This document shows positions 740 through 60,926 of a stretch of 64,000 nucleotides of DNA, piece after piece (the stretch's first letter is position 1; each line of letters starts with the position of its first letter). The DNA lies in the IMG/VR virus record IMGVR_UViG_3300024358_000009, positions 62,001 to 126,000 of that record. One strand, given 5' to 3'. The position numbers were made by a program, and so were the translations under genes. The notes under the pieces were generated by a model. That model saw only the letters and a list, made by a program, of their open reading frames with translations. It searched no databases and was not told the DNA's origin.

Positions 740-1365
740 GTATATTTGTGTGTTTGGAAGAACGATCTTTATTTATAAAAGATTTTATCAAAAGTTTGTC
801 TCTAGCAGCAAATGATAACACTCATTTGCACATTGTAGATATAGATTCATCTTCTGATATAGATGAAAATATATTAGAGATGATTGGAGATATTCAATTT
901 GAAGATACTAAAGAAGAATTTGTTTCATCGAAAGGTAAGCATGGAAAATTAAATATAACTTTAACAAAGATGTGCAAGCGTAAAAAAGATATAGTTAAAA
1001 ATTATTATTTTTACGAATACATGACTAACTATGATTTAATAGGATTTTTTGAATCAAATGTAGTTTTTTACCCAGAAATATTAAAAAAGGCAGCTTCTTT
1101 ATTAAATAATGACAGCTTTATTTTTGGTTCTTGTTATTTTGATAATGATGTTTTAACTAAAAGTAATTTCAGGTATACAAATTATCAAAAGTCTTTTACA
1201 GTAGACACTTGTATCAATACGAATTTTTTTATAAATAAACTAGCAGCAGAAAGTATAAAGCCAGTTGAGTTTTTTCAAAAACAAAAGAACCCAATTTCAA
1301 TAATCGGCGAAAACTTTCTTTGCTATAAATTTTATGAAAAAGGCTTTATGGTAAAAGAACAATGA
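715..1365 (+). CDS. Divergent GT-A (GT2-like) protein, DxD apparently lost
   Basis: Starts with a hydrophobic beta strand (VGIFVC) and has HIVDIDSSS. YDLIGFFESNVVFYPEIL sits where GT2 enzymes have YIxFLDxDDxxxP. Overlaps both neighbours. Confidence 0.45.
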   Translation: MSFDKTSVGIFVCLEERSLFIKDFIKSLSLAANDNTHLHIVDIDSSSDIDENILEMIGDIQFEDTKEEFVSSKGKHGKLNITLTKMCKRKKDIVKNYYFYEYMTNYDLIGFFESNVVFYPEILKKAASLLNNDSFIFGSCYFDNDVLTKSNFRYTNYQKSFTVDTCINTNFFINKLAAESIKPVEFFQKQKNPISIIGENFLCYKFYEKGFMVKEQ

Positions 1366-2051
1366 GTATATGCGTTATAATACCAGCTGCCGGTATAGGC
1401 AAGCGTATGAAATCTCATGGTCCAAAAGCCAATATTCAAATAGATAAAAATAATACTGTAATAGATAGAATATTTTCTATTGTTAAAAGAAATTTTGAAA
1501 AAACAGAAAACATTGTTGTTGTTGGTTTTCAAAAAGAAAAATTAAATTTTAAAAATCAATCTGCAAAAATAGTATTTAATGAAAATTTTGAAAATACTAA
1601 TGTATCTAAATCAATTAATTTGGGAATATCTAATTCAAAAAGCAAAGATTGTTTGATTATATATGGCGATATAGTGTTCGATAAAAATATATTTAAAAAC
1701 TTTGATTCATCAACAAGTTGTATTTGGGTTGAAAAAAGCGAAAAAAGAAGTTCTGAGGTTGGAATAAATTTTGAAAATGGTATTGTTGAACACTTTAGTT
1801 ATGGAGTTTATCCAAAGTGGGCACACATAGTTTTTCTAAAAGAAAAAGACAAAGACATTTTTTTAAACATATCTAATAATGAAAAGACAAACAAATGGTT
1901 TGGTTTTGAGATTTTAAATAAGATGATAGATATGGGAGTTAAGTTTTCAATAAAAACAATAGAAGAAGTTGTTGAAATAGATACATATTTAGATATAAAC
2001 AAAGCAAAAAAGTTTGTGAGGAAAAATGAAAATACTTTGCAAGCAAGATAA
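1362..2051 (+). CDS. Sugar-phosphate nucleotidyltransferase (NTP_transferase/MobA-GlmU-LicC-like)
   Basis: N-terminal VIIPAAGIGKRMKSHGPK signature (GxGxR...PK), plus LIIYGDIVF and C-terminal EIDT. Confidence 0.85.
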   Translation: MSICVIIPAAGIGKRMKSHGPKANIQIDKNNTVIDRIFSIVKRNFEKTENIVVVGFQKEKLNFKNQSAKIVFNENFENTNVSKSINLGISNSKSKDCLIIYGDIVFDKNIFKNFDSSTSCIWVEKSEKRSSEVGINFENGIVEHFSYGVYPKWAHIVFLKEKDKDIFLNISNNEKTNKWFGFEILNKMIDMGVKFSIKTIEEVVEIDTYLDINKAKKFVRKNENTLQAR

Positions 2052-3036
2052 TGGCAAGTTTTATAGAAAATTATCGGCTTTTGGAAAAATATTTTCCGAT
2101 GTTGGTCATGAATTTGTTTTTTGGAATAATGAAAACAAGTCATCGTTTGACGCTTTTTATGAACAAAAACCAGATATATTTATTGCTGCTACATCGAGCA
2201 TAGATGAGTCATTGATTAAATGTATCAAAAAATATAGTGAAACAAAAATTATATTAGTTGGTTCTTTTATTTATAGAGATATTAAACATAAAAAATTTGC
2301 TACTGATAAAGAAATAGAACTAATTAAAAAACTAAAAGAAGAAACTGGCAAACCAGACATATTAATCGGAAATTGCACAGAAAAAACAATTTTCTGCATA
2401 AAAGAGTGGGAAAAGATTGGGTGTAAAATATTAGCTTCTCCATCAGCAGCCGATTTATATACTTCTATATATCCAAAAAAAGATGAAAAATTTATTTCTG
2501 ATATAAATTTTGTTGGTAATTTTACTGATTATAATTCAAAAAACTTAGAGAACATACTATACCCTTTGATAAATGATCCTAATTTAAGCGTTAAGATTTT
2601 TGGTAGAAAAGAGTGGCCAATAATTAATTATCTTGGTTTTATAAACAACAACTTTTTAAAAAATGTAATCTGTTCTGCAAAAATATGCCCAGTTATTTCT
2701 AGTTTGCATACTCAAGAATTTGGTTTTGATTGTCCTCAGTTTTTATTTGATGTTCTATCTTCTCACGGTTTTGCTGCTTGTGATTTTTCTGAAGATGCTA
2801 ATTTTTTGTTAAAAGACTATGTTGTTTTTGCTAAAAACACACAAGATCAACTTGAATATATTTATGACTATTTAAACAAAGATGATCAAAGAGTAGAAAT
2901 TTCTAACAATGCTTATAATTTTATTATGAATAATCATACATATCATCATCGTTTGATAGACATTTTAAAAGAAATTGATTTATCGGAAGTGGCAACAAGC
3001 GTAAATGATAAATTATTAAAGAGGAGAATTGCTTGA
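2026..3036 (+). CDS. CgeB-like GT-B glycosyltransferase (Glyco_trans_1_2)
   Basis: SDINFVG, LSVKIFG..W and a C-terminal AYNFIMNNHTYHHRL motif typical of CgeB-family proteins. Confidence 0.7.
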   Translation: MKILCKQDNGKFYRKLSAFGKIFSDVGHEFVFWNNENKSSFDAFYEQKPDIFIAATSSIDESLIKCIKKYSETKIILVGSFIYRDIKHKKFATDKEIELIKKLKEETGKPDILIGNCTEKTIFCIKEWEKIGCKILASPSAADLYTSIYPKKDEKFISDINFVGNFTDYNSKNLENILYPLINDPNLSVKIFGRKEWPIINYLGFINNNFLKNVICSAKICPVISSLHTQEFGFDCPQFLFDVLSSHGFAACDFSEDANFLLKDYVVFAKNTQDQLEYIYDYLNKDDQRVEISNNAYNFIMNNHTYHHRLIDILKEIDLSEVATSVNDKLLKRRIA

Positions 3037-7048: not shown

Positions 7049-7717
7049 TTATAGATACTCAAGGCTTACATAAAGCCCATACTGAGTCTTAGATCCAATT
7101 CCGGTTGGAGAAGCACTTAAAGCAACATACCAATCGTGTCTTGTTCCAGATCCAGTAGTATTTCCAACTGGATTTAAACCACTAGTTCCTGGATTATTAC
7201 GCAAAGGTAAATATGTTCCAGTTTCAGTAACATTTGTCCAAGAACCAGATCCAGATCCAGAAACAGATTGGAATGGACTTGGATGAACTACTTCATAAGC
7301 AAATGTGCTAACACCGCTGGCTTTATTTGCAATACTATTACGATCATAAATAATAACTTTAGCGTTCTGTGTGCGAACAGATGTAGTTGGATGAGTAAAT
7401 CTAATATTTAATGTAGATAAATAATTTGGTATTCCAGTGACTGGAATAGATGTCGAGCTTCCTGGTGTTTCCTGACCCAAAATAGCAGATCCAGCTGCTG
7501 TCCATTTAACATTTCTAGCTTCATGACCTTGGGTAACACCAGAGCTATCAGTTACAAATGTTCTTTCCTGAAAACTATTTACTTGAACAGATGTACCAAA
7601 GCCATTTCCATAAAATCCAAGACCACTACCAACAGCAGCATTTATGTTAAAATCACCACTAATATCTGGAACACTAGTGCCTGGATTAACATAAAACGAT
7701 ATGCTTGGAGTACTCAT
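7049..7717 (-). CDS. Putative virion structural protein
   Basis: 222 aa, rich in Gly/Ser/Thr and beta-forming residues. Last gene of the morphogenesis operon, with RBS aggagag. Confidence 0.55.
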   Translation of the reverse strand: MSTPSISFYVNPGTSVPDISGDFNINAAVGSGLGFYGNGFGTSVQVNSFQERTFVTDSSGVTQGHEARNVKWTAAGSAILGQETPGSSTSIPVTGIPNYLSTLNIRFTHPTTSVRTQNAKVIIYDRNSIANKASGVSTFAYEVVHPSPFQSVSGSGSGSWTNVTETGTYLPLRNNPGTSGLNPVGNTTGSGTRHDWYVALSASPTGIGSKTQYGLYVSLEYL

Positions 7718-7746: not shown

Positions 7747-8559
7747 TTACACCATTTTTGAATCTTCAAACCTTTGAATAGCCTCTAAAAGTTCATGTGA
7801 ATACATTTCTTTTGCAAAATGTTCAATTATTTCGCCACAATCTAATCCTAACTCATTCCATCCTATTAAATAATTAACAACTCTGTCAATAAGGTTTAAT
7901 TTATAAGGAACTCCATTTGGGCGACCAAATCTATGTAACCACATTAAAAATGGTAAACATAAGGTTCTACCACCTCTTTGTCTTACTTTTTCTTGAATAT
8001 AACCTTCTTCCGCACCAAAACCCTTAAACTTTCGATTAAAACCTGGCCAAGACGACTTTTTCATGCAAAACAAACCCATGCCTTGCATTGGTATGTCAAA
8101 CGGCTGTCCTGATTGTACTTTAGGATCTGTTCCCCAAACGCCATACATATGACCAGACCAAACTGGATTAAAATGAGTGGCTAAATTGTCCATATCATCA
8201 TAAATAAGTGGACCTTGTAGCAAATCTTTATCTGGCCTGTTTATTGCAATATAGTCTTTTAAATTTCTTATAGCGTTTGGATATAGTAAAATATGCGAAT
8301 CTATACATAAAACATATTCTTTAGTGGCTCGTTCAAAAACAAAATTTTTAGCTTCTGATGGAGTGTGAGCAGCAGACGGTTCATGGTAATACTTTACACG
8401 CATAGAATTGCAAGTTTCTTCAAGTGTTTTACAACCTCTTTCTTCAGTATCTATAATTAAGATTTCACAATCTGATATGTCTTGATACATACGCAGTGCT
8501 TGAGTTGTAAAATAACAACCATCAAAATCTTTATATGTAGGAAGACCGATTGTTAACAT
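7747..8559 (-). CDS. GT-A glycosyltransferase resembling polypeptide O-HexNAc transferases (GT27/GT60-like)
   Basis: LTIGLPTY, ILIID, EYVLCIDSHILL (DxH), and IPMQGMGLFCM...GFGAEE...KVRQRGG...LP...LHRFGR. Likely start at MLTIG (8559), just after the upstream stop. Confidence 0.8.
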   Translation of the reverse strand: MLTIGLPTYKDFDGCYFTTQALRMYQDISDCEILIIDTEERGCKTLEETCNSMRVKYYHEPSAAHTPSEAKNFVFERATKEYVLCIDSHILLYPNAIRNLKDYIAINRPDKDLLQGPLIYDDMDNLATHFNPVWSGHMYGVWGTDPKVQSGQPFDIPMQGMGLFCMKKSSWPGFNRKFKGFGAEEGYIQEKVRQRGGRTLCLPFLMWLHRFGRPNGVPYKLNLIDRVVNYLIGWNELGLDCGEIIEHFAKEMYSHELLEAIQRFEDSKMV

Positions 8560-8560
8560 T

Positions 8561-9718
8561 TTATATAAACTCATCTAAATAAAATTTTATCTCTTCATAA
8601 CCATTTGCTTGATGTTCTACTATGCCATCAAAATCAAATGTCATTGTAACAGCATTATTTAATGACACTATACATTCTGCTGTTCCTGATTGAACTAAAT
8701 TATTAGTTCCACCACAATTGTATGAATCTTCTATTATAAATTTAATAGTTTTTCCGTTATTAGTTATTAACCAAGGATTTCCATTTTGAGTTCCACTATA
8801 TGATACTTGCCAATCTAATGCTATGTTTTCACTAAATCCAAAATTTGCTTCATAATATGCATTTTTATGAAAAAGAGCATCCCGAGTTGTAAAATAAATT
8901 TTTATTCTAAATGTTTGAGAAATTAAATATGGAAAATTCTTATAAAATGTTTTAGATGGAGGACCACAAAAACAACCAAGATTTTTACCTACAGATCCTC
9001 CTATTGCAATAAGAGAACTTGGATTTTCGCAATTAGTTATTCCTCCTAAAACAATTGGGGCTTCATTTCCGTCTGAATTAATCGGAAATAAATTAGAAAT
9101 TTCATTTTTTACTTGTTTAAAATATGGATTTTGTTGATAGCTTCCACCTTTTCCAATTATATCTCCAATTTCTATTATTTTAGTAGAGCTTGAACTTTGA
9201 ACCAATTGATTAAATAATCCAACATCATATTCATATAATTCCAGATGACTTTTGCTTGTTATTCCATTTGGAAATTCTCTATCTGTTCCAATAATTGGTA
9301 TTGAATAGCTATATAGTGAATTATAATGAACAGAACTATCCATAGTATTTATTACTATAACAATTTCATTATTAGAATTTTGTATTTCTCTATATGAATC
9401 ATAAATCCAATCTTCCATATTATTTACATAATTATTTATTTGTACAACTTTTACATTACTTAAAAGATTTAAACTGTAAATAAAGCCTTTAAATAAATCT
9501 ATAGCATTTGGTTGCCATTGAGAATAACTAATACTTCCTGTATTGTCTATTATAATAATTATTTCTAATTTTAAATTTTTTGCTATAAGATTTCTGTTTG
9601 TTGCTACTGTAGTAGATTTATTATATAAATTTAAAAAAAGTAATTTTAAATCACAAAATGTAATTCTTGCTGTAGTTGGACCGCAACAACCACAACCATC
9701 AATTATTTCTATTGACAT
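8561..9718 (-). CDS. vWA-like domain protein with Cys clusters
   Basis: IIIIIDNTGSIS resembles a MIDAS DxSxS variant after a hydrophobic strand. Also GCGCCGP and GCFCGPP motifs. Confidence 0.5.
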   Translation of the reverse strand: MSIEIIDGCGCCGPTTARITFCDLKLLFLNLYNKSTTVATNRNLIAKNLKLEIIIIIDNTGSISYSQWQPNAIDLFKGFIYSLNLLSNVKVVQINNYVNNMEDWIYDSYREIQNSNNEIVIVINTMDSSVHYNSLYSYSIPIIGTDREFPNGITSKSHLELYEYDVGLFNQLVQSSSSTKIIEIGDIIGKGGSYQQNPYFKQVKNEISNLFPINSDGNEAPIVLGGITNCENPSSLIAIGGSVGKNLGCFCGPPSKTFYKNFPYLISQTFRIKIYFTTRDALFHKNAYYEANFGFSENIALDWQVSYSGTQNGNPWLITNNGKTIKFIIEDSYNCGGTNNLVQSGTAECIVSLNNAVTMTFDFDGIVEHQANGYEEIKFYLDEFI

Positions 9719-9720
9719 TA

Positions 9721-12700
9721 TTAAACGCTCGGCGTTGTCGTGGTTGGGGATAAAGTAGTTGTTTGTGTTTCAGCACCGCTTCCACTAGCAACAACTTCTT
9801 TTAAAATTCCATTTTTAAATTTCATAACTTTCTTTTGTATCACCAAACTATTTCCACTACAAGATACACTATGTACATAAGGAACATCTTCTGTTTCACC
9901 ACTAGGATCTATATCTATAGGCAAACCAAACCATGTATTTAAATTAGCGTCAAATAATCCCAATACATTATTAATTGAATTACTAGTTCTGTCATTCCAC
10001 TCTCTTCCAGATCCATTAAATATTTTTACTTTAACATATTCATTACCTTTAGTTACTAAACTTTGCAAGTCATTTATATAAATATATCCAGAGCCAAACT
10101 CGCCAGCTTTAATAGGGTCATCTTCTGGATCTATATAAAATGTGGCTATACTATTATTTGTCCAAACACCTCTGGCTTCATCCCAAACTAAATCTACTGG
10201 TCCTGTTTTAAATGAATTAGCTTGTTGAACGGTTGATTCTTTATCATCGTTTTCATTTGGATATGGTTCACTAATTCTATCATTAGTAACTTTTGGAACT
10301 GCTTGCAATGTATATCTATCAAATCCCCATCCAGATAACATTAAAGGGCCACGCAAAGCAAAAGGTTTGATATTTTCAGTATCCGCACTTTCTTTCAAGT
10401 GACATTGCCCATCATTAAAAGAATTTGCAAATATACTTTGAACATCAGAGTATACATTAAATGGATTTAAATTAATTGAATTTAACATAGCCATTTCATT
10501 TTCTGGTGCTGTTAAAACCGGCATATATATTTCTTGGGCTTCAAGTGATGCTGGTATATCACCCACAGAACCATAATAATTATAAAACGGCCTAATTAAA
10601 CCATCTAATGACATAGCTGCCATATTTGGTGCTTTTATACCATAATAACCAACTGAAAATCTTGATGCATCATCCTGATCGCCTGTTTCAATATTATTTG
10701 CAATAACTGGATTACCTTTGTCAGTTATTGAAGCACTGGTTTCTGAAAGAAAATATATATGAGGACTTTGCTTTTTTTTGTTAAGTTTGTTTGTCTGTTT
10801 TTTTGCACGAACAATAGCATCTCTTCCTGCTCTTGCAGATAAACCAAGTTCAGCTACTGAATAATCTGTCTGAGAAGATACTTCTAATATTCTTGATCTA
10901 GTATCTTTTAAGCCATCACTAAATGATTTTAACTGATTTATTCTAGTCTGATTTAAAGTTCCAAACTTTGGAGAAAATCTTCTAAATCTATATGTAGTTT
11001 GAAAACCAGATTTTGAATCAATATTAATGTTAATAGAACTTATAGAAACTCCAACAAACTGCATTATATTGCCAAACTCAGTATTAGGTAATCCAGTAAC
11101 TGTAATATCGCCCTCTTCATTAAATTGCAAAAAACTCAAATTACTAGCAACCTTTTGTTGTCCATATAAATTCATTAACTCTGTACTTCCCCAATTCCAA
11201 GGAGTTAAAGAACTATCTAATTCAACTTCAGTTTTTCCTGCACGACCTATAACTGACCAAGGACCATAACTTAATAAATAATCTCTTACTGGAATACCAG
11301 CTGCAACTGGATTATTGGGTGTATCCATAAATCTAGAAGCTCTGTCTTTAGCACCAATTGGAGTTTTTAACTTTACTGTTTTTTGACCAGCATCCATGGT
11401 GTCTGATTTTAAAACAGCCATCAATGTGTTCCATATTGGATATGGATATTTTTGGAACTCCATTCCATATGTATATACAGTTAGATCATTAGTTACAAAA
11501 GCTGGTGAATTTGTATATGGAATTCCTTGATTTCCTTGGTTAGCTGGAACTGCCAAAACCATTTCTGCTGCACCATCAGTTGGAACAACATATCCACCTA
11601 AATTCCAAGCTACAGAATTAGAAACTGGTTTATCAGATACTAAAAATGGTTTAAATCTAAGGTCGCTCGCATTAATAAATTTATTGTTTTGAAAACCTCC
11701 AGCAAATTGAATTTGTCCAGCTTCAAATTCTGGAAACCAAGCAGAAGAAACTGATTCTCTGCTAAATTGCCATTTATTACCTTCATTGCGAACATATATT
11801 TGATCACCAATAGAAAAAGCAAAACCCATTTCAGAATATGTTTCATTTAATGCGTCTAATAATAAAGTTCTGTTTTCTTCGTATTCTGATATACCAGAAA
11901 CACCGCCTCTTTCAGCAGCAAGAACTTTTCCAAATCCTGTATCACGATGAAGACCATTATTTCCTGGGTCACCACCCAAAACTAAATATAAATCATATCT
12001 AAACTTTTTTAAATATTCATCAAAGTCATTACCATCGTCATTAATTCCAACTTTAGCCTCATGAGCTATTTCTATTTCAAATAAAGTCGAAACTAAAACT
12101 GTAGTGCCTAATAAATAAGCCAGCTTATTATTTTTTATTAATACAGGAACAACATCTGTATAAACTTCATAAGTTAACCATTGATCTGATCTTCTAAGCC
12201 AACCATTATTTTCTTCTTCAGTAGAAGGTGAAAGTTTTCCATTATTTAATGCTCTTTTATGCAAAATAACTTTAGTGGGTTGTCCAAATATTGGATTACC
12301 GTTAAAATCTTTTCCGTAATACCTAGAACCTTTATTAGTTAATAAAATTTGTTCTAAGTTTGGACCAACTAACATCTTTGAAGTAACATTTTCTTTTGCC
12401 AGACTTATTCCTCTACTATAACTAGAAACATTATTTCCAAATCCACTGGTAACTAAATTTTGCAATGCTGTTACAGGAAATTGATTATAAGTAGAAACAA
12501 CTCTTACAGTTATTACAAAACCATTTAATTCTACAAAAAAGTCTAAAGCCAATTGAGAACATACACTACTAATCATAGATAATAAATCTGTTTGAAAATC
12601 TGGTATAGTTATACCAGTAAAGAATGGTATTTGACTTAAATCTACTGCATATCTAATGCCATTAAAAACCATAGGCCCACCATACATAGATGAACCAGAA

Positions 12701-13161
12701 GCTGGATTATTTGTAAATCTAGCTATAGCAAGACGAACTACATCAAAATACATTCCATTCGCTGTCATTTTTGAATCTGTAAATCCAAGAGCACCATAAG
12801 CATTTAAAACATTTGGTGCTCCAACAGGACCGGGATAATCTTTACAGATGATAGAATAATTAGCCAATATAAATCTTGGATCTATGATTTTCGCTTCAAA
12901 TAATGGATATCCACTTTGACTGCCTGTTTGATTAAAGCTTTCTAATACGCCTTGAAAAGAAAAACCAGTTGGTAAAGAAAAAATTCCTGGTGTTCCAACA
13001 ATTGCGGATAAATCAGGTGCAGCATCTGGACTAACACCTAAAGGAATATTGCCTGGATCTGCGACAAGATTAAATGTCATCGAGGATTCTTGAGATCCCC
13101 AACCACAATCAGATTTAATGCTAGTTACTGAATATCCACCAAATTGTATAGATCCTGACAA
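9721..13161 (-). CDS. Large tail tip/baseplate hub-like structural protein
   Basis: 1146 aa downstream of the TMP, TTG start with RBS ggag, Thr-rich C-terminus. Call is from synteny. Confidence 0.55.
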   Translation of the reverse strand: MSGSIQFGGYSVTSIKSDCGWGSQESSMTFNLVADPGNIPLGVSPDAAPDLSAIVGTPGIFSLPTGFSFQGVLESFNQTGSQSGYPLFEAKIIDPRFILANYSIICKDYPGPVGAPNVLNAYGALGFTDSKMTANGMYFDVVRLAIARFTNNPASGSSMYGGPMVFNGIRYAVDLSQIPFFTGITIPDFQTDLLSMISSVCSQLALDFFVELNGFVITVRVVSTYNQFPVTALQNLVTSGFGNNVSSYSRGISLAKENVTSKMLVGPNLEQILLTNKGSRYYGKDFNGNPIFGQPTKVILHKRALNNGKLSPSTEEENNGWLRRSDQWLTYEVYTDVVPVLIKNNKLAYLLGTTVLVSTLFEIEIAHEAKVGINDDGNDFDEYLKKFRYDLYLVLGGDPGNNGLHRDTGFGKVLAAERGGVSGISEYEENRTLLLDALNETYSEMGFAFSIGDQIYVRNEGNKWQFSRESVSSAWFPEFEAGQIQFAGGFQNNKFINASDLRFKPFLVSDKPVSNSVAWNLGGYVVPTDGAAEMVLAVPANQGNQGIPYTNSPAFVTNDLTVYTYGMEFQKYPYPIWNTLMAVLKSDTMDAGQKTVKLKTPIGAKDRASRFMDTPNNPVAAGIPVRDYLLSYGPWSVIGRAGKTEVELDSSLTPWNWGSTELMNLYGQQKVASNLSFLQFNEEGDITVTGLPNTEFGNIMQFVGVSISSININIDSKSGFQTTYRFRRFSPKFGTLNQTRINQLKSFSDGLKDTRSRILEVSSQTDYSVAELGLSARAGRDAIVRAKKQTNKLNKKKQSPHIYFLSETSASITDKGNPVIANNIETGDQDDASRFSVGYYGIKAPNMAAMSLDGLIRPFYNYYGSVGDIPASLEAQEIYMPVLTAPENEMAMLNSINLNPFNVYSDVQSIFANSFNDGQCHLKESADTENIKPFALRGPLMLSGWGFDRYTLQAVPKVTNDRISEPYPNENDDKESTVQQANSFKTGPVDLVWDEARGVWTNNSIATFYIDPEDDPIKAGEFGSGYIYINDLQSLVTKGNEYVKVKIFNGSGREWNDRTSNSINNVLGLFDANLNTWFGLPIDIDPSGETEDVPYVHSVSCSGNSLVIQKKVMKFKNGILKEVVASGSGAETQTTTLSPTTTTPSV

Positions 13162-14678: not shown

Positions 14679-17663
14679 TTATCTTCCTCTTACATACATA
14701 GTTATGCTACCGTTTTTTACACCTTCGGTAAATGGTATAGCCAAAAAGATATTGTTATTTAACTCAAGGTTATTAGCTGTATACAGTGTAAAAGGAGTTG
14801 CTGTAGAATAAGTGGTATAACCGCTTATATACATAGGTAAGGTTTTATCTAATCCAGGAACTTTTTCTATAAAAAGATTAATTCCTGAATTTATTGGCAT
14901 AGCACCAGTAAATGTCTCATCAGTTTTCATACTAAGTGTTAAAGTATTTGATTTTAATTCATAGCTATTCTTTAAAAACAATGATCTTGATGCATTTGAG
15001 CTAGGAAGATCTGACTTTAAAAACATGTTAACATTAGAGCTATATTTAAATGTGTCGTTTATTTTTATAAACAAGTTCATCACTTTATTAAATACAGTTC
15101 CATCTATATACAAACTCTTTCCTGCTATTATTTGAGATATTCCAATTCCGGCAGAATTGATAAATAAAGGTAAAGAATTAATTACACTGACTGGTTCTTG
15201 AGCTTTTAAAAATAGTGGAATTTTTATATTTCTTGGTTCGCCACTTATATATAAATCTTTAGCATTATTAATACTATTATAGCCCCTAACAAATAATGTT
15301 CTTGTTGGACTTGAACTTGGATTTAATTGAGTTGAATGACCAGTAACAAATAAGGTTGTATCTACATTAATAGCACCATAAACAAATAATGTTTTAGAGC
15401 CAACTATGTCTGGTGGCAATTGAGCAATTAATGCAAGTCCAGGATTCGGATTAGTGTTTATAGCTGGGGTTTTATAAATATCGTAACCTTTTATAAATAA
15501 AGTTGTGCTATTTATAGTTCTTGTATCTTCAACAATAGTAATTGGAGATGTATAAACTTTTAAATAAAAAGGAGTATTTTCATTACTTACTGAAACTAAA
15601 TCCCAATATACATTGTTTAATGCATAAGCTGCTGCTGGCTGTGAACCATAACCAGTTGCTAATCTAAAAAATGTAAACTTTGCAGTTCCAGATCCAGTTG
15701 ATGTTAAATCTAAATTTGGATTTCCGCCAACAAGTCTTGCTTTTGAAAATCTTGGTTTTGAAGATGTATAAGGATTTGATAATTGTCTATAAATTCCTTC
15801 ACGCCATGCTATAGAATTTAATCTTGGATCATTACTTACATTAGATTTAATCATAGATGTATAATAAACACCGTCTATTTTTGCTGTGTCAAAAAGTTCA
15901 TATTCTATATCCTCAGACCAAATTGCTGGATCTGACGATCCAACATTTTTTAAGTCAATTAATCCATTCGGCAAATCATTGCCTTCAATTTTTACTATAG
16001 TGGAAGACTGTGTTAAATAATTATCTATAACAAATTTATTGCTTGCGATTTCTATTGCGTTATTTGCTATGTCTACAGATTCATTTAAATTAATTGTTAC
16101 TTCAAAATTAACTGGATACTCATTAACAGTTTCTCTTTTCGCTTGAATGAAAACATCTGACTGACCCCATTGAACTGGATAATCATCATTAAATCCAAAA
16201 TATTGAATTCTATATGGATAATCAAATGTAGTTTTTACAATATCGTTTTTATAATATGTAGTTGATATATCAAATATATATTCATAAAAAGGCTCTAAGG
16301 TTTGTGCAGTAACCCAATATAAAGGAAATAAATCTGGTTGTTTTGGTTCTGAAGATGTGCTTGGACTTATAGCTATATAACTAATGCCGTCATAAAAAAC
16401 TATATCACGAATTGAATAATTAGAAGAAGATGACCAATCACCTTTCCAAGATGATAAATCAGAACTAAAAGAAGAAGAAAAAATCAATCTTATATCAAGT
16501 GATTCGCCTGTTGTTAGCGTACTCGATGTAAAATAAATATCTAAAGTGGCTTCTCCATTTACATAATTATATGTTGTTCTTGAATTGGTTGGAACAACAG
16601 AAATAGATTCTTGAGAAGATGGATTAACTTTTTGCCAAGATAGTATATAATTTAAATTATTTTGATATGCTAATTGAGAATCTACATCGTAACATCTAAT
16701 ACCTTCGGCATCCAACAAAGTTATTTTTATAGGTGGTTCTAAAAGAGGCACTTGTTGATAATTTTTAAGAAAGTAAGCTTGATTAGGAACATTATTTACT
16801 TTGATAAATTTTGGAGAAGAATAATTTCTGCCATTACCGTTATTGTATATTTTTGATAATTCTTCATCTGGTATATATACATTATAAATTCTTAACTCAT
16901 CTATGTTTAGATCAAATACAATATCATCATCTATACCTCCAAAATAAAATCTATCAATATAAGCATTTAATATTCCTGAATAAGAATAAAATGAATTGTC
17001 TATTAAACTTTCAAATTTATAATAAGTAAAACCGTAATATGTGTAAGAAAATTTAACAGGTGAGTATTCGCCAAATTTATTTCCATTTAAATAAAACTCT
17101 GTTTTGTAATAAATGCCAGCTTGTGCATCAGAAAATTGTTTTTGTCTTATAGTAAATAAATTCCAAGTGTTAGGCAAACAACTGTTAATACCACTGTTTA
17201 ATTCTATATCATTTAGTTTAGTTACTTGCCATGACCCATTTTCTAATGGCGTTCCTCTATAATGTTGTAAAATAACAAGAATAGAGTTATTTTCAGAGTC
17301 TTTTTGAATATAAATTGGATAATCTAGTGCTGATCCAGATGAGTATAATCTACCTATAACCGGAGATGATATTTCATCTTCCGTTAAGGTTTGAAACCAA
17401 AAAGATAATGTATACTCTTGTGCATATGCGTTCTGTTGAGAACCATATGGATTATACAAATAAAAGCCGAGAGATTGTCTGTCATATCTTGATCTAAAAC
17501 ATCTATTTAAATTAGTTAAGCCATCTTCAAAAGAAAAAGTTGGATCTGTAGTTGGAGATTGATAATTATATTGATATGTTCCATTATATGAAAGAACTCT
17601 AGATGCTAGAGGACCAGTATTAAATAAATTATCTTCACAAGCAAATCTATCTGTTAGTGCCAT
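14679..17663 (-). CDS. Tail-associated protein with LamG/ConA-like domain, CBM-like modules and C-terminal beta repeats
   Basis: YTLSFWF...WNLFTI...IDELRIYN....DEELSKIYN (LamG_3 pattern). WKGDWSSSSNYSIRDIVFYDGISYIA module. Repeated (L/M)(F/Y)(I/V)xG units. Confidence 0.7.
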   Translation of the reverse strand: MALTDRFACEDNLFNTGPLASRVLSYNGTYQYNYQSPTTDPTFSFEDGLTNLNRCFRSRYDRQSLGFYLYNPYGSQQNAYAQEYTLSFWFQTLTEDEISSPVIGRLYSSGSALDYPIYIQKDSENNSILVILQHYRGTPLENGSWQVTKLNDIELNSGINSCLPNTWNLFTIRQKQFSDAQAGIYYKTEFYLNGNKFGEYSPVKFSYTYYGFTYYKFESLIDNSFYSYSGILNAYIDRFYFGGIDDDIVFDLNIDELRIYNVYIPDEELSKIYNNGNGRNYSSPKFIKVNNVPNQAYFLKNYQQVPLLEPPIKITLLDAEGIRCYDVDSQLAYQNNLNYILSWQKVNPSSQESISVVPTNSRTTYNYVNGEATLDIYFTSSTLTTGESLDIRLIFSSSFSSDLSSWKGDWSSSSNYSIRDIVFYDGISYIAISPSTSSEPKQPDLFPLYWVTAQTLEPFYEYIFDISTTYYKNDIVKTTFDYPYRIQYFGFNDDYPVQWGQSDVFIQAKRETVNEYPVNFEVTINLNESVDIANNAIEIASNKFVIDNYLTQSSTIVKIEGNDLPNGLIDLKNVGSSDPAIWSEDIEYELFDTAKIDGVYYTSMIKSNVSNDPRLNSIAWREGIYRQLSNPYTSSKPRFSKARLVGGNPNLDLTSTGSGTAKFTFFRLATGYGSQPAAAYALNNVYWDLVSVSNENTPFYLKVYTSPITIVEDTRTINSTTLFIKGYDIYKTPAINTNPNPGLALIAQLPPDIVGSKTLFVYGAINVDTTLFVTGHSTQLNPSSSPTRTLFVRGYNSINNAKDLYISGEPRNIKIPLFLKAQEPVSVINSLPLFINSAGIGISQIIAGKSLYIDGTVFNKVMNLFIKINDTFKYSSNVNMFLKSDLPSSNASRSLFLKNSYELKSNTLTLSMKTDETFTGAMPINSGINLFIEKVPGLDKTLPMYISGYTTYSTATPFTLYTANNLELNNNIFLAIPFTEGVKNGSITMYVRGR

Positions 17664-20600
17664 TATGCTGTTCCTATATCTCTGAATATATCAGCTTGAG
17701 ATATCGCTCCGCCAGTAGTACTTTCTAAAGCCTTAACAATTTTAGACATAGTATTAGAAACAACTGTATTAACTTCACCAGCAAAATTAGGAGAATCTAT
17801 CTTAATATTAGCATTATTTTCAACGGTTATATTACCATTAATTTCTTCAGGAATATTTATTTTCGCCAAATCATTAATCGCTGATTGTAACCTAGTTATT
17901 GATTCTCCCATAGACTTAATACTACTATCAAATTTATTTACTCCGCCATCAAACATTTTTACAGAATCCGAGAAAGACTTTGTATCTATTTGATCTAACT
18001 TTTGTGCAGAAGAAGATTTAGTGACTTTATCAAATAACCTATCTCCTCCAGCTATTCCACCGTCAAAAAATCTTTGTTCATTTATGGCGTTTAAATTGCC
18101 ATATCCAATTGACTGAGCAGCTTGTGGATTTAATACAAACTCACCAGCACGAAGACGAGCCGGTATCATATCTCCATAACTAGCACCATTTACATATCCG
18201 CCAAAAGCAAAACCTTTTGGTTTATTTGCTGGATCTAACGAGTTTAAGAAAAATCTTTGATTAAAACCCAATCCTTGCTCTTCAGCTTGTCCGGCAGCCT
18301 GAAATGCTATGTCCGATCCTGGCAATGCATTAGCCATTTCGTCTGGAGTTAAATCTGGCATAAATCCCTTTCCTCTTATAAAATCGCCAGATATTTGCTT
18401 GTCCGTTATATCGCCAATAATATTTAGTCTATTTTTATTTTCTCTTCCGGCTGCTTCTTGAATAGAATCAACATCGCTACGCCTTAAAAAGATGGTTTGC
18501 GTTCCTATTTTGTTAAAAACAGTATCATCAAATCCTGTAACTCTTTGGAAATCATCGCTACCATAAAATCCTTTAATTTTTCTATTTTTCATATAATTAA
18601 TTATCGATGCTTTTATTTTTTCTGGAATAACTACATTGCCTTTAATTCCAACAATGTCTTTAAAATAACTTGGATCTATATCCTTTCTGTCTTTTAAGGC
18701 AGCTGGTTTATTCTTTTCATCTGCAAATGCTTTGATTTCAGCAAGATCAAAGTACTTTTCCGCTTCTTTAAAACTGTCTCCTTTATTTCTTTTTCCAAAT
18801 CTATCAAGGCTAACTAAACCACTTACAATTCCTGTATATCTCTTTTCTGCATTCACTAATCTTTGAATATCTCTAGCTTTTTCTATATTTTTTCTAGCTT
18901 CTTCTGGGGTTGTTTCAAAATCTTTGGCCATTCCTAAGTCAAGTTTATTATTATCGTTTGTTGGTAATCTCAACATTAATTTAAATATATCTACTTCTCT
19001 ATCTATAAGCTGAGGTCTAAACTGACTCCTTCTATCTTTTTCTTGTTTAACAACATTGAATCGTTCCATAGCTTTTTCATCTTTAACATTGTTAGCTTGT
19101 ATTGCATCTATATAATCCTTAAAAATATCAAATTCAGTATTAAATTGTTCTGATTTCACTATTCGTAAATTATCAAAACTCCACGAGTAAATATCAGTTT
19201 CCTCAAGTCTGTCTTTCTTTTCCTTGAATTTATTTGCAGCAACAGCTGTTAAGCCAGCTATATTTAAACCTGATTCAAGTGGATTAAAAGAAAAACCAGC
19301 AGCCACATCGCCACCTTCTGCACGATAAATAAGACCTCCATTTGCTCTAAAGCCAGCACCTAACCTTCTCTTTATGTCTTCCTCTTCTTCTTTTTTAGCC
19401 TGTTCTTTTTCTAATTTTTTAAAAGCATCATTTAATAAATCAAACTGATTTTTTTCTAAACCTTTTCCTCTGTTGCCAAAAGGTGGTTTTTGAGACTGCT
19501 CAGTTAATTGTTGCTGCTTTCTTGCTTGATTAGCTATCCATTCTCTTGTAAGTTGATCGCCAACCTCTTCATTAGTCATTCTTTGTTGACTAGGTGCTTT
19601 ACCACTAAATAAAGCATTTAATCTATCTTGTTGTTCCTTAGATTGTTCTTGCTCAAGAAATTTTTTACCGCCTTCAATTAATAATTGAAATTGATCTCTT
19701 GTTAATCTTTTATTTTTATCAAGTTCTTTATTTTTAGCTTCTCTTTCATAAAACCCTATTGGCAAAGAATAAGCTAAATCTCTTCCAATGGTTGGATCAT
19801 TTGCATACTGTTCTCTTAGTGTATAAGCTCTAAATAAAGGATGAAACGGACTATTTAATATATTTTGATCTTCTCTAGCTTGGAAGGCTTGTGCTAATAA
19901 CCCACCACCCTGACGATAAACTACTCCTCCAGCACTCAAACTCTTTAACAACCCCATATTCTTTTCTGTAGATGCTCTATTAACTACATATGAACCAGCT
20001 TCTAAATATTGAAATTCAGTGTCCGTTCCTCTACTTAATGGATGAGATTTTCCACTAGATTTAACAATGTTAACTCCACCGCCACCTTTTCTATAATTAA
20101 TATCATTCAAAAGAGATAGATTGTTTTTAGCAATTTGTGGTGGAATGACTGCTTCGCCTGGCGTAAGCATGGTTGGAATCATACCTCCGCCATTTCTTAA
20201 TAAGAGATTATTTCTAAATTTCTCCCGAAATCCATTATCATCAAGGTATTTTAAATAAGATCTAAGCCTCAAGCGTTCTTTTGAAACAAGATCTTTTTGT
20301 TCAAGTTCATTCAAAACATCTATACCACTAACACCGTTATGTCTTTCAGCTAGAAATTCTTTATGTTCTTTTGATTGTATCCAAGCTTCTTTAAGTTCAT
20401 AAATCTTGTCATACATTTCTTGTGAGTTTTGCGGAGCTTTCCATTCAAAAACTTCATCAACCTTTGGCTTTTCTTGTTGAATAGCAGCTGCGTTTGCTTT
20501 TTCTTTTGCTAATTCTGGTGGAATTTTAAGTTTAAATGGTTCGGGTGGAACCGAAGGTGTTATCAATTGTTGTGGAGCTTGAAGTTTGTCTTCAACAACT

Positions 20601-36776: not shown

Positions 36777-37586
36777 TTAGTTCCCCTTTAAATCGCTTAA
36801 TATAGTTCCTGGAGGTTCATAATTTGCAAAAACATAAAAATATCTAGGTCCAGTGTTTTGATAAGACAATTCATGATCAGCAAACCCAAAATTTTGAACT
36901 CTTGTTTCTGGTAATTGTGCAGTTTCTAAATAACTCCATTTCGGCCCTTTTTCCATTCCGTTAAAAATAGCTGCGTCAAAATTTATTGGGTTTCTTACTT
37001 CTAGGTTTCTTTTGTCAATTGAACCTGTATAACAATTATGTGCACCCAAAGGAATTCCCTCTGGTAGTTCAAACTTTAAATAGTTTACATTTGTTAAATC
37101 GGTCAAACTTTTCCATCTATCAAAAGGAAAACCATTAGTTGAAGCACTAATAAATTTTTCTAAACTTGGATCTCCTAATGTATAATAGTACTGTTTACTT
37201 TTTGGATCTTTTCCTGCGTTACATTCATATAAAAATGATATGTATAAAAAAGGTTTTTCTTCTAAATAATAAAATTTAAAATAAATACTTGTTTTAAATC
37301 CGACTTCCTTAACTAATTCCTCTGGACAACAACCAATAGGATGTCCTGATGAAAAATTTTGATCGTAAATCATAATATCGACATTTGATTTTCCATAATT
37401 TGAATTTTTTATATACTGTTTTGTCTGTGGAAACTCGTAGTAAAATTGATGATTAAAATCTCTTGGGTTAAAATTTAAATTTTTATTTTTTAAAAAAAGC
37501 CAAGATGGACTTTGTGATCTCCAATTGAATCTTGGATCTGTAAAGAAAAATCCAGCTGTTAAATTATAAACTTTGTTGTTTAACAT
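36777..37586 (-). CDS. Hypothetical protein
   Basis: 269-aa ORF coupled to both neighbours. No family recognised. Confidence 0.6.
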   Translation of the reverse strand: MLNNKVYNLTAGFFFTDPRFNWRSQSPSWLFLKNKNLNFNPRDFNHQFYYEFPQTKQYIKNSNYGKSNVDIMIYDQNFSSGHPIGCCPEELVKEVGFKTSIYFKFYYLEEKPFLYISFLYECNAGKDPKSKQYYYTLGDPSLEKFISASTNGFPFDRWKSLTDLTNVNYLKFELPEGIPLGAHNCYTGSIDKRNLEVRNPINFDAAIFNGMEKGPKWSYLETAQLPETRVQNFGFADHELSYQNTGPRYFYVFANYEPPGTILSDLKGN

Positions 37587-60362: not shown

Positions 60363-60926
60363 TTATTCCAAAAATTTTGGTGTTATTCCATTTATACAAC
60401 CGTCTATATAGAATACACCACAAAAAGCAGCTATTTGTTTTGCTGTAGATTCAGTATTTTGCATTAAGTCTGAGTAATTAACTATTAATTTTCTGCCTGA
60501 AAAATTATTAAAAATATTTTCAGCTGTATTATACTGTTTTTCTATAGTATCTGGAAAAGCTTGATCGCCCATAAGCATAGAATATTCAATATTGGCTTTG
60601 TTTATATTTCTTTTTGCCCATATTATACTAGTTTGTATTGAAGTTTCTGATATGAACTTATTCCATGCATCTTTTTTTAGAAATTCAAATGATCTTGTTC
60701 CAATTTTTCCTTGTTGAACTGTTTTTAGTTTTAAATCCCAGTAATTTTTTGGATTTGTATAAATATATCTTGTGTACTTATCATTGAAACTTCCTGTTGG
60801 ATACCAGTCTGGATTATCATTTGCATTCTCTCTTTCTCCCATATTTATGCCAAGAGAGTTTAATATTTTGGCTATAACGCTAGTTCCAGATCTATAAGAA
60901 CCAATTATAATTGTGCAATCTTTCAT
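60363..60926 (-). CDS. Sulfotransferase family protein
   Basis: N-terminal IIIGSYRSGTSVIAKILNSLG matches the PAPS 5'-phosphosulfate-binding loop. C-terminal LIVNYSDLMQNTESTAKQIAAFCG is typical of Sulfotransfer_3. Confidence 0.8.
   Translation of the reverse strand: MKDCTIIIGSYRSGTSVIAKILNSLGINMGERENANDNPDWYPTGSFNDKYTRYIYTNPKNYWDLKLKTVQQGKIGTRSFEFLKKDAWNKFISETSIQTSIIWAKRNINKANIEYSMLMGDQAFPDTIEKQYNTAENIFNNFSGRKLIVNYSDLMQNTESTAKQIAAFCGVFYIDGCINGITPKFLE

What the first reader, a model, noticed from the sequence alone, without database searches (positions are those of the whole stretch)
7747..8559. Candidate phage-encoded mucin-type O-glycosylation system: a polypeptide-HexNAc-transferase-like GT in the virion operon with poly-Thr fibre substrates
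Seen in sequence: this GT-A has CIDSH (DxH instead of DxD) and the string IPMQGMGLFCM..GFGAEE..KVRQRGG..LP..LHRFGR. It is co-transcribed with structural genes that carry long Thr tracts (37586-45529, 51553-58299, C-terminus of 9721-13161). Established: DxH plus the P.M.GGLF..WGGE..GG..P...GH.FR (Gal/GalNAc-T) motif characterises eukaryotic ppGalNAc-Ts (GT27). IDSH also occurs in GT60 enzymes (Dictyostelium Gnt1, Trypanosoma OGNT), and the trypanosome enzymes prime Thr-rich mucins. Inference: the phage O-glycosylates its own fibre linkers, producing mucin-like stalks that are stiffened, protease-resistant or shielded.
Basis: partly seen in the sequence, partly recalled or inferred. Interest (0 to 1): 0.88.

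Follow-up and report, generated by a model that had tools for sequence, protein, structure and literature searches.

The report
Phage enzyme for sugar-coating poly-threonine fibres
A small soluble glycosyltransferase at the end of this phage's tail operon folds like the animal enzymes that start mucin glycosylation, and in many phages and bacteria its relatives sit beside threonine-rich proteins, so it probably adds sugars to the phage's own poly-threonine fibre segments, although nobody has tested this.

Summary
Window 7747-8559/8574 (-) encodes a 270/275-aa soluble GT-A enzyme with every quoted string. D92-x-H94, E190 and H214-R-F-x-R218 are invariant across its family. The 2647-aa and 2250-aa proteins carry poly-Thr runs of up to T20, written with mixed codons.

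Three results support the interpretation:
- **Fold:** the AlphaFold model (pLDDT 95) has ppGalNAc-T (GT27) catalytic domains as its 48 best PDB neighbours.
- **Phage context:** in 44 non-redundant viral loci, the gene just upstream of the GT is Thr-rich in 39%, against 1.2% for distant genes and 0/27 for another phage GT-A family. A reverse search starting from the Thr-rich partners finds the GT 15-17 bp downstream.
- **Bacterial context:** 31 of 78 loci place 1-3 small genes (TAT-like signal plus poly-Thr tail) just upstream of a multidomain GT homologue.

Not supported: membership of GT27 or GT60, which fails the sequence tests. There is no lectin domain or membrane anchor, and the sugar and anomer are unknown. 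E190 hints at an inverting enzyme. In this phage the long tracts lie 30-50 kb from the GT.

Verdict: a probable Thr-tract protein O-glycosyltransferase, from a GT27-like prokaryotic/phage family I could not find described. All evidence is computational.

The parts
7747..8574 (-). GT-A glycosyltransferase. 275 aa from the first ATG; 270 aa from the likelier ATG at 8559. D92-S-H94, E189-E190 and H214-R-F-G-R218 are the conserved catalytic-type residues. Soluble.
7049..7717 (-). 222-aa S/T/G-rich protein, last gene of the array. It is the conserved neighbour of the GT throughout this phage lineage. Function unknown.
   Evidence: No Pfam, PHROG or PDB match.
8561..9718 (-). 385-aa protein immediately upstream. 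Its stop overlaps or abuts the GT start. Function unknown (weak VWA hit, E 0.1).
9721..13161 (-). 1146-aa tail-tip protein. Its C-terminal tail (about 9724-9774) is S/T-rich (TTTLSPTTTTP) and is conserved in the closest relatives. It is the nearest candidate acceptor.
17663..29593 (-). 3976-aa tape-measure protein. It marks the array as the tail module.
   Evidence: PF10145, E 7e-23; homologue in L007.
37586..45529 (-). 2647-aa protein with eight poly-Thr tracts (T6-T20), flanked by P/A/S. Proposed main acceptor.
51553..58305 (-). 2250-aa fibre protein with T8 and T19 tracts, collagen triple-helix repeats and a CBM5/12 domain. Proposed acceptor.
45522..48467 (-). 981-aa collagen-repeat and CBM5/12 fibre protein. 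Ser-rich (16%), with no poly-Thr.
58299..60359 (-). 686-aa collagen-repeat fibre protein.
60363..60926 (-). 187-aa sulfotransferase-like protein next to the fibre genes. Possible glycan or protein modifier.
   Evidence: PF13469, E 2.7e-7; partial match.
60923..61858 (-). 311-aa divergent GT-A-like protein with invariant DxD, GGGD and H..H. Possible second glycosyltransferase.
1362..3036 (+). Two overlapping genes on the opposite strand: a MobA/IspD-like nucleotidyltransferase (1362-2051) and a Glyco_trans_1_2 protein (2026-3036). Possible donor activation or glycan extension. Conserved in relatives.

Best explanation
The gene encodes a soluble, metal-dependent GT-A protein O-glycosyltransferase. 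During infection it would work in the host cytoplasm. It would transfer a sugar from a nucleotide sugar onto threonine (and perhaps serine) hydroxyls of Thr-rich, disordered segments in the phage's own tail and fibre proteins. The candidates are the poly-Thr linkers of the 2647-aa and 2250-aa proteins and the Thr-rich C-terminal tail of the 1146-aa tail-tip protein. Modification would happen before or during virion assembly and would yield mucin-like glycosylated stalks. Other glycan genes in the window may extend or decorate the first sugar: a second GT-A-like protein, a sulfotransferase-like protein, a GT-B-like protein and a nucleotidyltransferase.

Shown: the fold, the conserved residues, solubility, position in the tail module, and a specific genomic linkage between this GT family and Thr-rich proteins in both phages and bacteria.

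Inferred: that the Thr tract is the acceptor, which proteins are modified in this phage, the donor sugar, the anomeric configuration (E190 suggests inverting, so beta), and the biological benefit.
For: 1. Fold and residues.
- The AF2 model has pLDDT 95.4.
- The 48 best PDB neighbours by Foldseek are all ppGalNAc-T catalytic domains (E 2e-13 to 1e-10, TMq 0.61-0.77). The first other enzyme, TarP, ranks 49 with TMq 0.55.
- A second GT-A from the same window, run the same way, gave only generic GT-A hits. The GT27 result is therefore not automatic for any GT-A.
- DxH, E190 and H214-R-F-x-R are invariant.
- 15 of 48 members give weak PF02709 (Gal/GalNAc-T motif domain) matches. In the four individually scanned members that matched, these fall at residues about 170-210.

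2. Phage context.
- In 44 non-redundant viral loci, the gene immediately upstream on the same strand is Thr-rich (at least 10 T in 20 aa) in 17 of 44. For genes four or more positions away the figure is 7 of 563 (Fisher p 4e-16, not corrected for phylogeny).
- The partners are unrelated proteins of 94-1600 aa. They fall in about 9 of 14 context groups and on both halves of the GT tree. The window's clade is sister to Thr-rich-linked clades.
- Reverse test: of 37 Thr-rich ORFs ending in C..CNKLG[FY], 27 have the GT 15-17 bp (one 330 bp) downstream. None of 7 chance matches to the pattern has a GT.
- Control family: 0 of 27 loci at rank -1, and 2 of 432 genes overall.
- The Thr-rich ORFs use mixed Thr codons, and all other reading frames are closed.

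3. Bacterial context.
- 471 species genomes carry homologues.
- 31 of 78 loci have same-strand Thr-rich ORFs within 3 kb upstream. There are 38 such ORFs there, against 7 in the other kb bins and 4 on the opposite strand.
- Many of these are 70-130-aa proteins with a TAT-like signal and a poly-Thr tail, in 1-3 tandem copies.
- The bacterial GTs are fused to further GT2 or GT25 domains, a methyltransferase, a PqqD-like peptide-binding domain or TatA/B-like segments.

4. This phage.
- The GT has no membrane segment or signal peptide.
- It lies at the distal end of the tail module.
- The genome carries unusually long poly-Thr tracts in fibre-like proteins.
Against: - There is no biochemical evidence of any kind.
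- In the window's own lineage the adjacent genes (385 aa and 222 aa) are not Thr-rich, and the long tracts are 30-50 kb away.
- Several GT-bearing lineages show no S/T-rich gene within 5-10 kb.
- In loci anchored on a conserved neighbour gene, 3 same-strand and 6 opposite-strand GTs lack a Thr-rich ORF beside them.
- The adjacency counts are not independent phylogenetically.
- Sequence similarity to GT27 is insignificant.
- The N-terminal half looks like any GT2, including the prophage wall-teichoic-acid enzyme TarP (E 2e-7).
- Genomic linkage does not prove an enzyme-substrate relationship.
Confidence: 0.6

Rival explanations
1. It is a protein glycosyltransferase with a different acceptor: the conserved 222-aa neighbour, the 385-aa protein, or the collagen-like fibres (as in collagen or BclA-type glycosylation). 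The poly-Thr tracts would be unmodified linkers.
For: In the window's lineage the 222-aa S/T/G-rich protein is always adjacent to the GT. Three fibre proteins carry collagen repeats. Some bacterial homologues are fused to a GT25 domain, the Pfam family that also includes collagen galactosyltransferases.
Against: The 222-aa family is confined to one lineage, whereas the GT is about 50% identical across lineages whose common neighbour type is a Thr-rich protein. No collagen genes are seen next to the GT in other lineages.
Confidence: 0.12
2. It modifies a host cell-envelope glycan (teichoic acid, LPS, capsule) during infection. That could block superinfection or alter the receptor, as prophage TarP or seroconversion enzymes do. 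The Thr-rich neighbours would simply be variable fibre genes sharing an accessory-gene hotspot.
For: The best sequence-level PDB match is TarP (E 2e-7 for the N-terminal half). A cytidylyltransferase-like gene and a GT-B-like gene lie nearby on the other strand. The gene sits at an operon end, where accessory genes collect.
Against: Structurally TarP ranks below 48 GT27 entries (TMq 0.55 against about 0.7). The enzyme has no membrane or lipid-carrier features. The hotspot idea does not explain three things: the 15-17 bp spacing to unrelated Thr-rich proteins across lineages, the absence of such neighbours around another phage GT-A family, and the same linkage in bacterial chromosomes with TAT-signal poly-Thr proteins.
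Confidence: 0.12
3. This is the strict form of the reader's idea. The enzyme is a true retaining polypeptide alpha-GalNAc (or alpha-GlcNAc) transferase, so a prokaryotic or phage member of GT27 or GT60 that makes genuine mucin-type Tn-like structures.
For: DxH plus a C-terminal His, GT27 as the nearest fold, and weak PF02709 signals.
Against: PF11397 (GT60) matched 0 of 48 members, and the GT27 sequence matches are insignificant. There is no lectin domain. The invariant E190 aligns with the Asp of the GGED motif of chondroitin polymerase K4CP. From textbook knowledge, that position is the catalytic base in inverting GT2/GT7 enzymes and is Asn in GT27.
Confidence: 0.1
4. It glycosylates DNA or a small molecule (hypermodified bases, a secondary metabolite).
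For: In one relative (L003) the GT lies among nucleotide-metabolism genes (thymidylate synthase, DHFR, dCMP deaminase). There are weak NCBIfam hits to the mycofactocin GT.
Against: That context occurs in a single lineage. The fold neighbours are protein-modifying enzymes. The strong linkage to Thr-rich proteins would be left unexplained.
Confidence: 0.04

Closest known systems
Eukaryotic polypeptide GalNAc-transferases (CAZy GT27, for example human GalNAc-T2)
   Same: Nearest solved fold: the top 48 Foldseek hits, TMq up to 0.77. Shares the D-x-H metal motif and a C-terminal His-x-Phe-Arg-like motif in the same register. The proposed acceptor is dense Thr tracts in disordered segments.
   Different: Only about 14% identity and no significant sequence match. 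About 270 aa, with no ricin lectin domain, no membrane anchor and no secretory-pathway location. It has Glu, not Asn, after the GGE motif, so it may be inverting. The donor is unknown.
Cytoplasmic GT60 enzymes (Dictyostelium Gnt1, trypanosome OGNT)
   Same: Soluble or cytoplasm-facing DxH GT-A enzymes that start O-glycosylation of proteins. The trypanosome enzymes act on Thr-rich mucins (textbook knowledge, not tested here).
   Different: The Pfam model for the family (PF11397) matches none of 48 members, even at E 10.
Mycobacteriophage virion glycosylation (Freeman et al. 2023, as summarised in PMC12619734)
   Same: Phage-encoded glycosyltransferases are proposed or shown to modify the phage's own structural proteins. 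The C-terminal tail of a virion protein is one candidate site here too (1146-aa protein).
   Different: The enzyme family is unrelated: tblastn of this GT finds nothing in 50,697 GenBank phage records. The acceptors here would be long poly-Thr linkers in giant fibres. The hosts are uncultured aquatic bacteria.
TarP, the prophage-encoded wall-teichoic-acid beta-GlcNAc transferase (GT2)
   Same: Best sequence-level PDB match for the nucleotide-binding half (E 2e-7). It is a phage-borne soluble GT-A.
   Different: Lower structural similarity (TMq 0.55, rank 49). TarP has DxD rather than DxH in the aligned position, and its polyol-phosphate acceptor has no counterpart in the gene neighbourhoods seen here.
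Serine-rich-repeat adhesin glycosylation (GtfA/GtfB with the accessory Sec system)
   Same: This is an analogy for the bacterial homologues: glycosylation of a low-complexity Ser/Thr tract in the cytoplasm, followed by export through a dedicated or folded-protein route (here a TAT-like signal).
   Different: The enzymes have a different fold (GT-B, GT4), the export pathway differs, and the substrates here are much smaller.

Membership tests
GT27 (ppGalNAc-T) | GT-A catalytic domain structurally matching ppGalNAc-T | tested here: met
   The top 48 Foldseek PDB hits are all GT27, E 2e-13 to 1e-10, TMq 0.61-0.77.
GT27 (ppGalNAc-T) | D-x-H manganese-binding motif | tested here: met
   D92 and H94 are invariant in 48 homologues.
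GT27 (ppGalNAc-T) | Gal/GalNAc-T motif domain (Pfam PF02709) with a third metal-ligand His | tested here: inconclusive
   H214 is invariant. PF02709 matched 15 of 48 members; the four shown map to residues about 170-210 at 11-16 bits, below the 23-bit cut-off.
GT27 (ppGalNAc-T) | Significant sequence similarity to family members | tested here: not met
   Profile search against the PDB: GalNAc-T2 and T7 at E 0.24-1.3. The single-sequence search found none.
GT27 (ppGalNAc-T) | C-terminal ricin-type lectin domain and type II membrane anchor | tested here: not met
   The protein is 275 aa with only PF00535. Maximum 19-aa hydropathy is 0.78.
GT27 (ppGalNAc-T) | Retaining transfer of alpha-GalNAc from UDP-GalNAc to Ser/Thr | not testable with these tools
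   This needs an enzyme assay and NMR. The invariant E190 at the GT2 base position hints otherwise.
GT60 (Gnt1/OGNT) | Match to the family model PF11397 | tested here: not met
   0 of 48 members matched at E up to 10.
GT2-type GT-A (Pfam PF00535) | N-terminal nucleotide-binding half matches PF00535 above the gathering score | tested here: met
   32.8 bits against a 23.3-bit cut-off. 48 of 48 members match.
GT2-type GT-A (Pfam PF00535) | Carboxylate catalytic base in the (G)GE-D/E motif, indicating an inverting mechanism | tested here: inconclusive
   E190 is invariant and aligns with the Asp of GGED in chondroitin polymerase. The mechanism itself was not tested.
Phage virion self-glycosylation systems (mycobacteriophage type) | GT encoded within or at the end of the virion structural operon | tested here: met
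   Same-strand array: tape measure (17663-29593), then 994, 501, 1146 and 385-aa genes, then the GT, then the 222-aa gene. The same order is seen in the 55%-identical relative L007.
Phage virion self-glycosylation systems (mycobacteriophage type) | Homology of the GT to the known phage enzymes | tested here: not met
   No tblastn match in 50,697 GenBank phage records at E 1e-5. No PHROG match.
Phage virion self-glycosylation systems (mycobacteriophage type) | Glycans demonstrably attached to virion proteins | not testable with these tools
   This needs glycoproteomics of virions or of co-expressed proteins.

The most novel reading that the evidence does not exclude
This GT family (about 1,300 50%-identity clusters, in phages and in at least 471 bacterial species) would be a prokaryotic 'proto-mucin' machinery. 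A soluble enzyme with a ppGalNAc-T-like fold would densely O-glycosylate poly-Thr tracts in the cytoplasm. In phages it would build glycosylated fibre stalks and small Thr-rich virion-associated proteins. In bacteria it would modify small poly-Thr proteins that are then exported by the TAT pathway. The family would be a prokaryotic sister or forerunner of the eukaryotic GT27 enzymes.
Probability: 0.3. Interest if true: 0.9.

Novelty: new variant of a known kind. Interest (0 to 1): 0.78.

Why it matters
- **A second way for phages to glycosylate themselves.** If confirmed, this would differ from the mycobacteriophage case and would be widespread in aquatic phages. It bears on virion stability, host recognition and how phages are seen by immune systems or grazers.
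- **Evolution of mucin glycosylation.** It would place a ppGalNAc-T-like fold with the DxH signature in bacteria and their viruses. That makes the long-discussed origin of mucin-type O-glycosylation directly testable.
- **A new bacterial system.** It points to an undescribed bacterial system of TAT-signal poly-Thr proteins with multidomain GTs. The carriers include cable bacteria and cultured strains of Bradyrhizobium and Oricola.
- **A possible tool.** A 270-aa soluble enzyme that decorates simple poly-Thr tags in the bacterial cytoplasm would be attractive for glyco-engineering.

Tried and rejected
- **PHROGs.** Searches of the GT and its neighbours, and of the structural genes, gave nothing useful. 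A PHROG scan of a relative's module identified only replication genes.
- **NCBIfam.** No specific family, only weak generic GT2 hits.
- **GenBank phages.** tblastn found no match, so no cultured relative is available for comparison.
- **PDB sequence searches.** Searches with the whole protein and with the C-terminal half alone gave only noise beyond TarP.
- **Promoter and terminator scan.** Chance-level counts, so co-transcription is unresolved.
- **Relatives of the 2647-aa fibre.** The IMG/VR search found only identical copies. The question of whether GT-less relatives lack tracts could not be answered for this phage.
- **Failed queries.** A tighter pattern worked.
- **Anchoring on the conserved neighbour gene.** This test of joint presence and absence was blurred by the 4-kb flanks. 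It also showed that the coupling is not absolute.
- **PDB profile searches.** Searches for the 222-aa neighbour and for the 311-aa protein found nothing.
- **Literature.** Searches found no paper linking a GT27-like phage enzyme with poly-Thr proteins. Freeman et al. 2023 itself was not held.
- **Ideas considered and set aside.** A GtrB-type lipid-carrier GT (no membrane segments) and a DNA glycosyltransferase (supported by one lineage's context only).
Full report
**What is at the site**

Window 7747-8574 (-) is an ORF of 275 aa.
- The second ATG, at 8559, lies one base after the stop of the upstream gene. It matches where homologues start and the 270-aa database entry.
- Every quoted string is present.
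- Pfam places the N-terminal half in Glycos_transf_2 (PF00535, E 8e-8, above the cut-off).
- PHROGs and NCBIfam give no specific family.
- The protein has no hydrophobic segment.

**Genomic setting**

The gene lies near the end of a 56-kb minus-strand array. In transcription order (high to low coordinates) the array contains:
- a divergent GT-A-like gene and a sulfotransferase-like gene (60923-61858 and 60363-60926);
- three collagen-repeat fibre proteins, two of them with CBM5/12 domains;
- a 2647-aa protein;
- a 3976-aa tape-measure protein (PF10145, E 7e-23);
- genes of 994, 501, 1146 and 385 aa, then the GT, then a final 222-aa gene.

The same order (tape measure, several genes, then the GT) is kept in a relative whose GT is 55% identical (L007). 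'Tail/virion operon' is therefore justified. Co-transcription itself could not be shown.

**The poly-Thr tracts are real**

- The 2647-aa protein has eight tracts, up to T20. The 2250-aa protein has T8 and T19.
- The tracts use all four Thr codons and are bounded by Pro, Ala or Ser, as linkers are.
- The 1146-aa protein, two genes upstream of the GT, ends in a short Thr-rich tail. The tail is conserved in the closest relatives.

**What the enzyme looks like**

- The family is large and sharply delimited. It has 960+ hits in the 90%-identity clusters. In the 50%-identity library there are 1,286 representatives at E 1e-30 or better out of 1.84 billion proteins, most of them multidomain.
- Across 48 members at 44-84% identity, these residues are invariant: D92-x-H94, Q120-G-P, G187, E190 and H214-R-F-x-R218.
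- An AlphaFold model built from this alignment is confident (pLDDT 95.4, pTM 0.92).
- Foldseek against the PDB returns ppGalNAc-T catalytic domains as the 48 best hits (E 2e-13 to 1e-10, TMq 0.61-0.77). The first other enzyme is TarP at rank 49, with TMq 0.55.
- As an unplanned control, a second GT-A-like protein from the same window was modelled equally well (pLDDT 93). It gave only weak generic GT-A hits.

By sequence the picture is weaker.
- The profile matches TarP, TarS, K4CP and PglI over the nucleotide-binding half (E 2e-7 to 4e-3).
- Only GalNAc-T2 and T7 align through the C-terminal motif region, and their E-values are insignificant (0.24-1.3).
- PF02709 matches 15 of 48 members. In the four members I scanned individually that matched, the match falls at residues about 170-210 and is below threshold.
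- PF11397 (GT60) matches none.
- The K4CP alignment puts family E190 opposite the Asp of GGED. From textbook knowledge, that residue is the catalytic base of inverting GT2/GT7 enzymes and is Asn in GT27. The enzyme may therefore be inverting. This point is an inference.

**Comparative genomics in phages**

The GT has no relative among 50,697 GenBank phages but more than 523 in IMG/VR.

- In many fetched loci, an ORF with poly-Thr runs ends a few bases before the GT start, on the same strand.
- After collapsing to 44 loci with GTs under 90% identical, the gene at rank -1 is Thr-rich (at least 10 T in 20 aa) in 17 of 44. For genes four or more positions away the figure is 7 of 563 (Fisher p 4e-16, not phylogeny-corrected).
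- The partner proteins are mutually unrelated and range from 94 to about 1600 aa. Some carry Calx-beta-like repeats, some are TPST, TTQ or TTTE repeats, and some are pure poly-T.
- They occur in about nine of fourteen distinct gene-order contexts and on both halves of the GT tree. The window's clade is sister to two Thr-rich-linked clades.
- The Thr-rich frames are the only open frames, and they use mixed Thr codons.
- One large lineage has hypervariable Thr-rich proteins that share a C-terminal C-x3-4-C-N-K-L-G-[FY] end.
- Searching IMG/VR for DNA encoding that ending gave 44 matches. Thirty-seven are Thr-rich ORFs. In 27 of these the GT starts 15-17 bp (one 330 bp) downstream. Three are an upstream paralogue 4.5 kb before the GT, and seven are the same paralogue type with no GT found in the fetched locus, mostly because too little downstream sequence was fetched. 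The seven chance matches have no GT.
- Around a different phage GT-A family, 0 of 27 non-redundant loci have a Thr-rich gene at rank -1, and only 2 of 432 genes are Thr-rich overall.

**Comparative genomics in bacteria**

An independent data set points the same way.
- 471 species genomes carry homologues at 46-54% identity. They include Thermomicrobiales and other Chloroflexota, Hyphomicrobiales, Bradyrhizobium, Oricola, Desulfobulbaceae (including cable bacteria), Arenicellales, Gemmataceae and Bryobacteraceae.
- In 31 of 78 loci there are same-strand Thr-rich ORFs within 3 kb upstream of the GT domain. That is 38 ORFs, against 7 in all other kb bins and 4 on the opposite strand.
- Many are 70-130-aa proteins with a TAT-like signal (RRxFLK, a hydrophobic stretch, then PAHAA) followed by a poly-Thr tail, in one to three tandem copies. 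Chloroflexota versions add a Cys-rich module.
- The bacterial GTs are fused to extra GT2 or GT25 domains, a methyltransferase, an ATP-grasp domain, a PqqD-like peptide-binding domain or TatA/B-like segments.
- This pattern fits cytoplasmic glycosylation of a Thr tract, elaboration of the glycan, and export by a route that accepts bulky or folded cargo.
- All these small proteins are annotated as hypothetical.

**Limits**

- No experiment exists.
- In the window's own lineage the GT's neighbours are the 385-aa and 222-aa proteins. The 222-aa family is its constant companion and has no recognisable fold by sequence.
- The long tracts are 30-50 kb away, and I could not examine whole genomes of relatives.
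- Several lineages show no S/T-rich gene within 5-10 kb of the GT.
- In loci anchored on a conserved neighbour gene, the counts were as follows:
  - 28 with both a Thr-rich ORF and the GT;
  - 3 same-strand and 6 opposite-strand GTs without a Thr-rich ORF;
  - 21 with a Thr-rich ORF but the GT out of view, mostly because the flank was truncated;
  - 13 with neither.
- In one case the partner is poly-Ser (L316).
- The linkage is therefore strong but not obligatory, and the counts are not phylogenetically independent.

**Conclusion**

The best reading is a soluble protein O-glycosyltransferase acting on Thr-rich disordered segments of the phage's own tail and fibre proteins (confidence about 0.6).
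- It works like a polypeptide glycosyltransferase and looks most like GT27.
- It is not a GT27 or GT60 member by sequence or architecture.
- 'Mucin-type' in the strict alpha-GalNAc sense is unsupported.
- The main rivals are a different protein acceptor and host envelope glycan modification of the TarP type (about 0.12 each).
- I found no description of this family or of its linkage to poly-Thr proteins.
- The known precedent for phage self-glycosylation, in mycobacteriophages (as summarised in PMC12619734), uses unrelated enzymes.

Noticed in passing
window 60363-60926 (-) and 60923-61858 (-): A sulfotransferase-like gene (PF13469, E 2.7e-7, partial match) overlaps the end of a 311-aa divergent GT-A-like gene. 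That gene has invariant DxD, GGGD and H..H, an AF2 pLDDT of 93, and only generic GT-A structural hits. Both lie directly beside the collagen-repeat and poly-Thr fibre genes.
   Followed up: partly
window 1362-2051 (+) and 2026-3036 (+): A MobA/IspD-like nucleotidyltransferase (E 4e-9) and a Glyco_trans_1_2 protein (E 2e-12) lie on the opposite strand. Both are conserved in relatives (L007, L011). They could make an activated donor or extend a glycan.
   Followed up: no
window 45522-48467, 51553-58305, 58299-60359 (-): Three fibre proteins carry long collagen triple-helix repeats (G-x-Q-type triplets; PF01391, E down to 3e-90). Two of them also have CBM5/12 carbohydrate-binding modules.
   Followed up: partly
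L010 versus L012 (IMG/VR contig 3300024509_000007, 221 kb): The same contig holds two copies of the module (1146-aa, 385-aa, GT, 222-aa and following genes) about 147 kb apart; the two GT copies are 79% identical at the protein level and the 222-aa proteins 86%. This is either a real duplication of the tail-tip module or a chimeric assembly of two related phages of about 145 kb.
   Followed up: no
L038-L046, L052, L067, L075, L077-L082, L087 and L089-L128: The hypervariable Thr-rich proteins just upstream of the GT share a conserved C-terminal end, C-x3-4-C-N-K-L-G-[FY]-COOH, preceded by a Pro-rich segment and a final Thr run. Its role is unknown. It could be a docking or assembly signal.
   Followed up: partly
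L130-L204 (bacterial genomes), for example L158:4106-4898, L186:4158-4896, L141:4116-4902: One to three tandem small genes encode a TAT-like signal plus a poly-Thr tail, upstream of multidomain homologues of the GT. Carriers include cable bacteria (Ca. Electrothrix YB6, Ca. Electronema PJ), Bradyrhizobium diazoefficiens and Oricola indica. All are annotated as hypothetical.
   Followed up: partly
L007:1-2261 (relative's tape-measure protein): The 3828-aa tape-measure homologue in a related phage carries an ART-PolyVal (ADP-ribosyltransferase-like) Pfam hit in addition to PhageMin_Tail. The window's own 3976-aa protein showed only PhageMin_Tail.
   Followed up: no
L316:4811-5167: In one phage the small ORF directly upstream of the GT has a poly-Ser run (S11) instead of poly-Thr. 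This suggests Ser may also be an acceptor.
   Followed up: no
window 8561-9718 (-): The 385-aa protein upstream of the GT begins with a Cys cluster (CGCCGP) and gives a weak VWA-domain hit (E 0.1). It is confined to the window's closest relatives.
   Followed up: no
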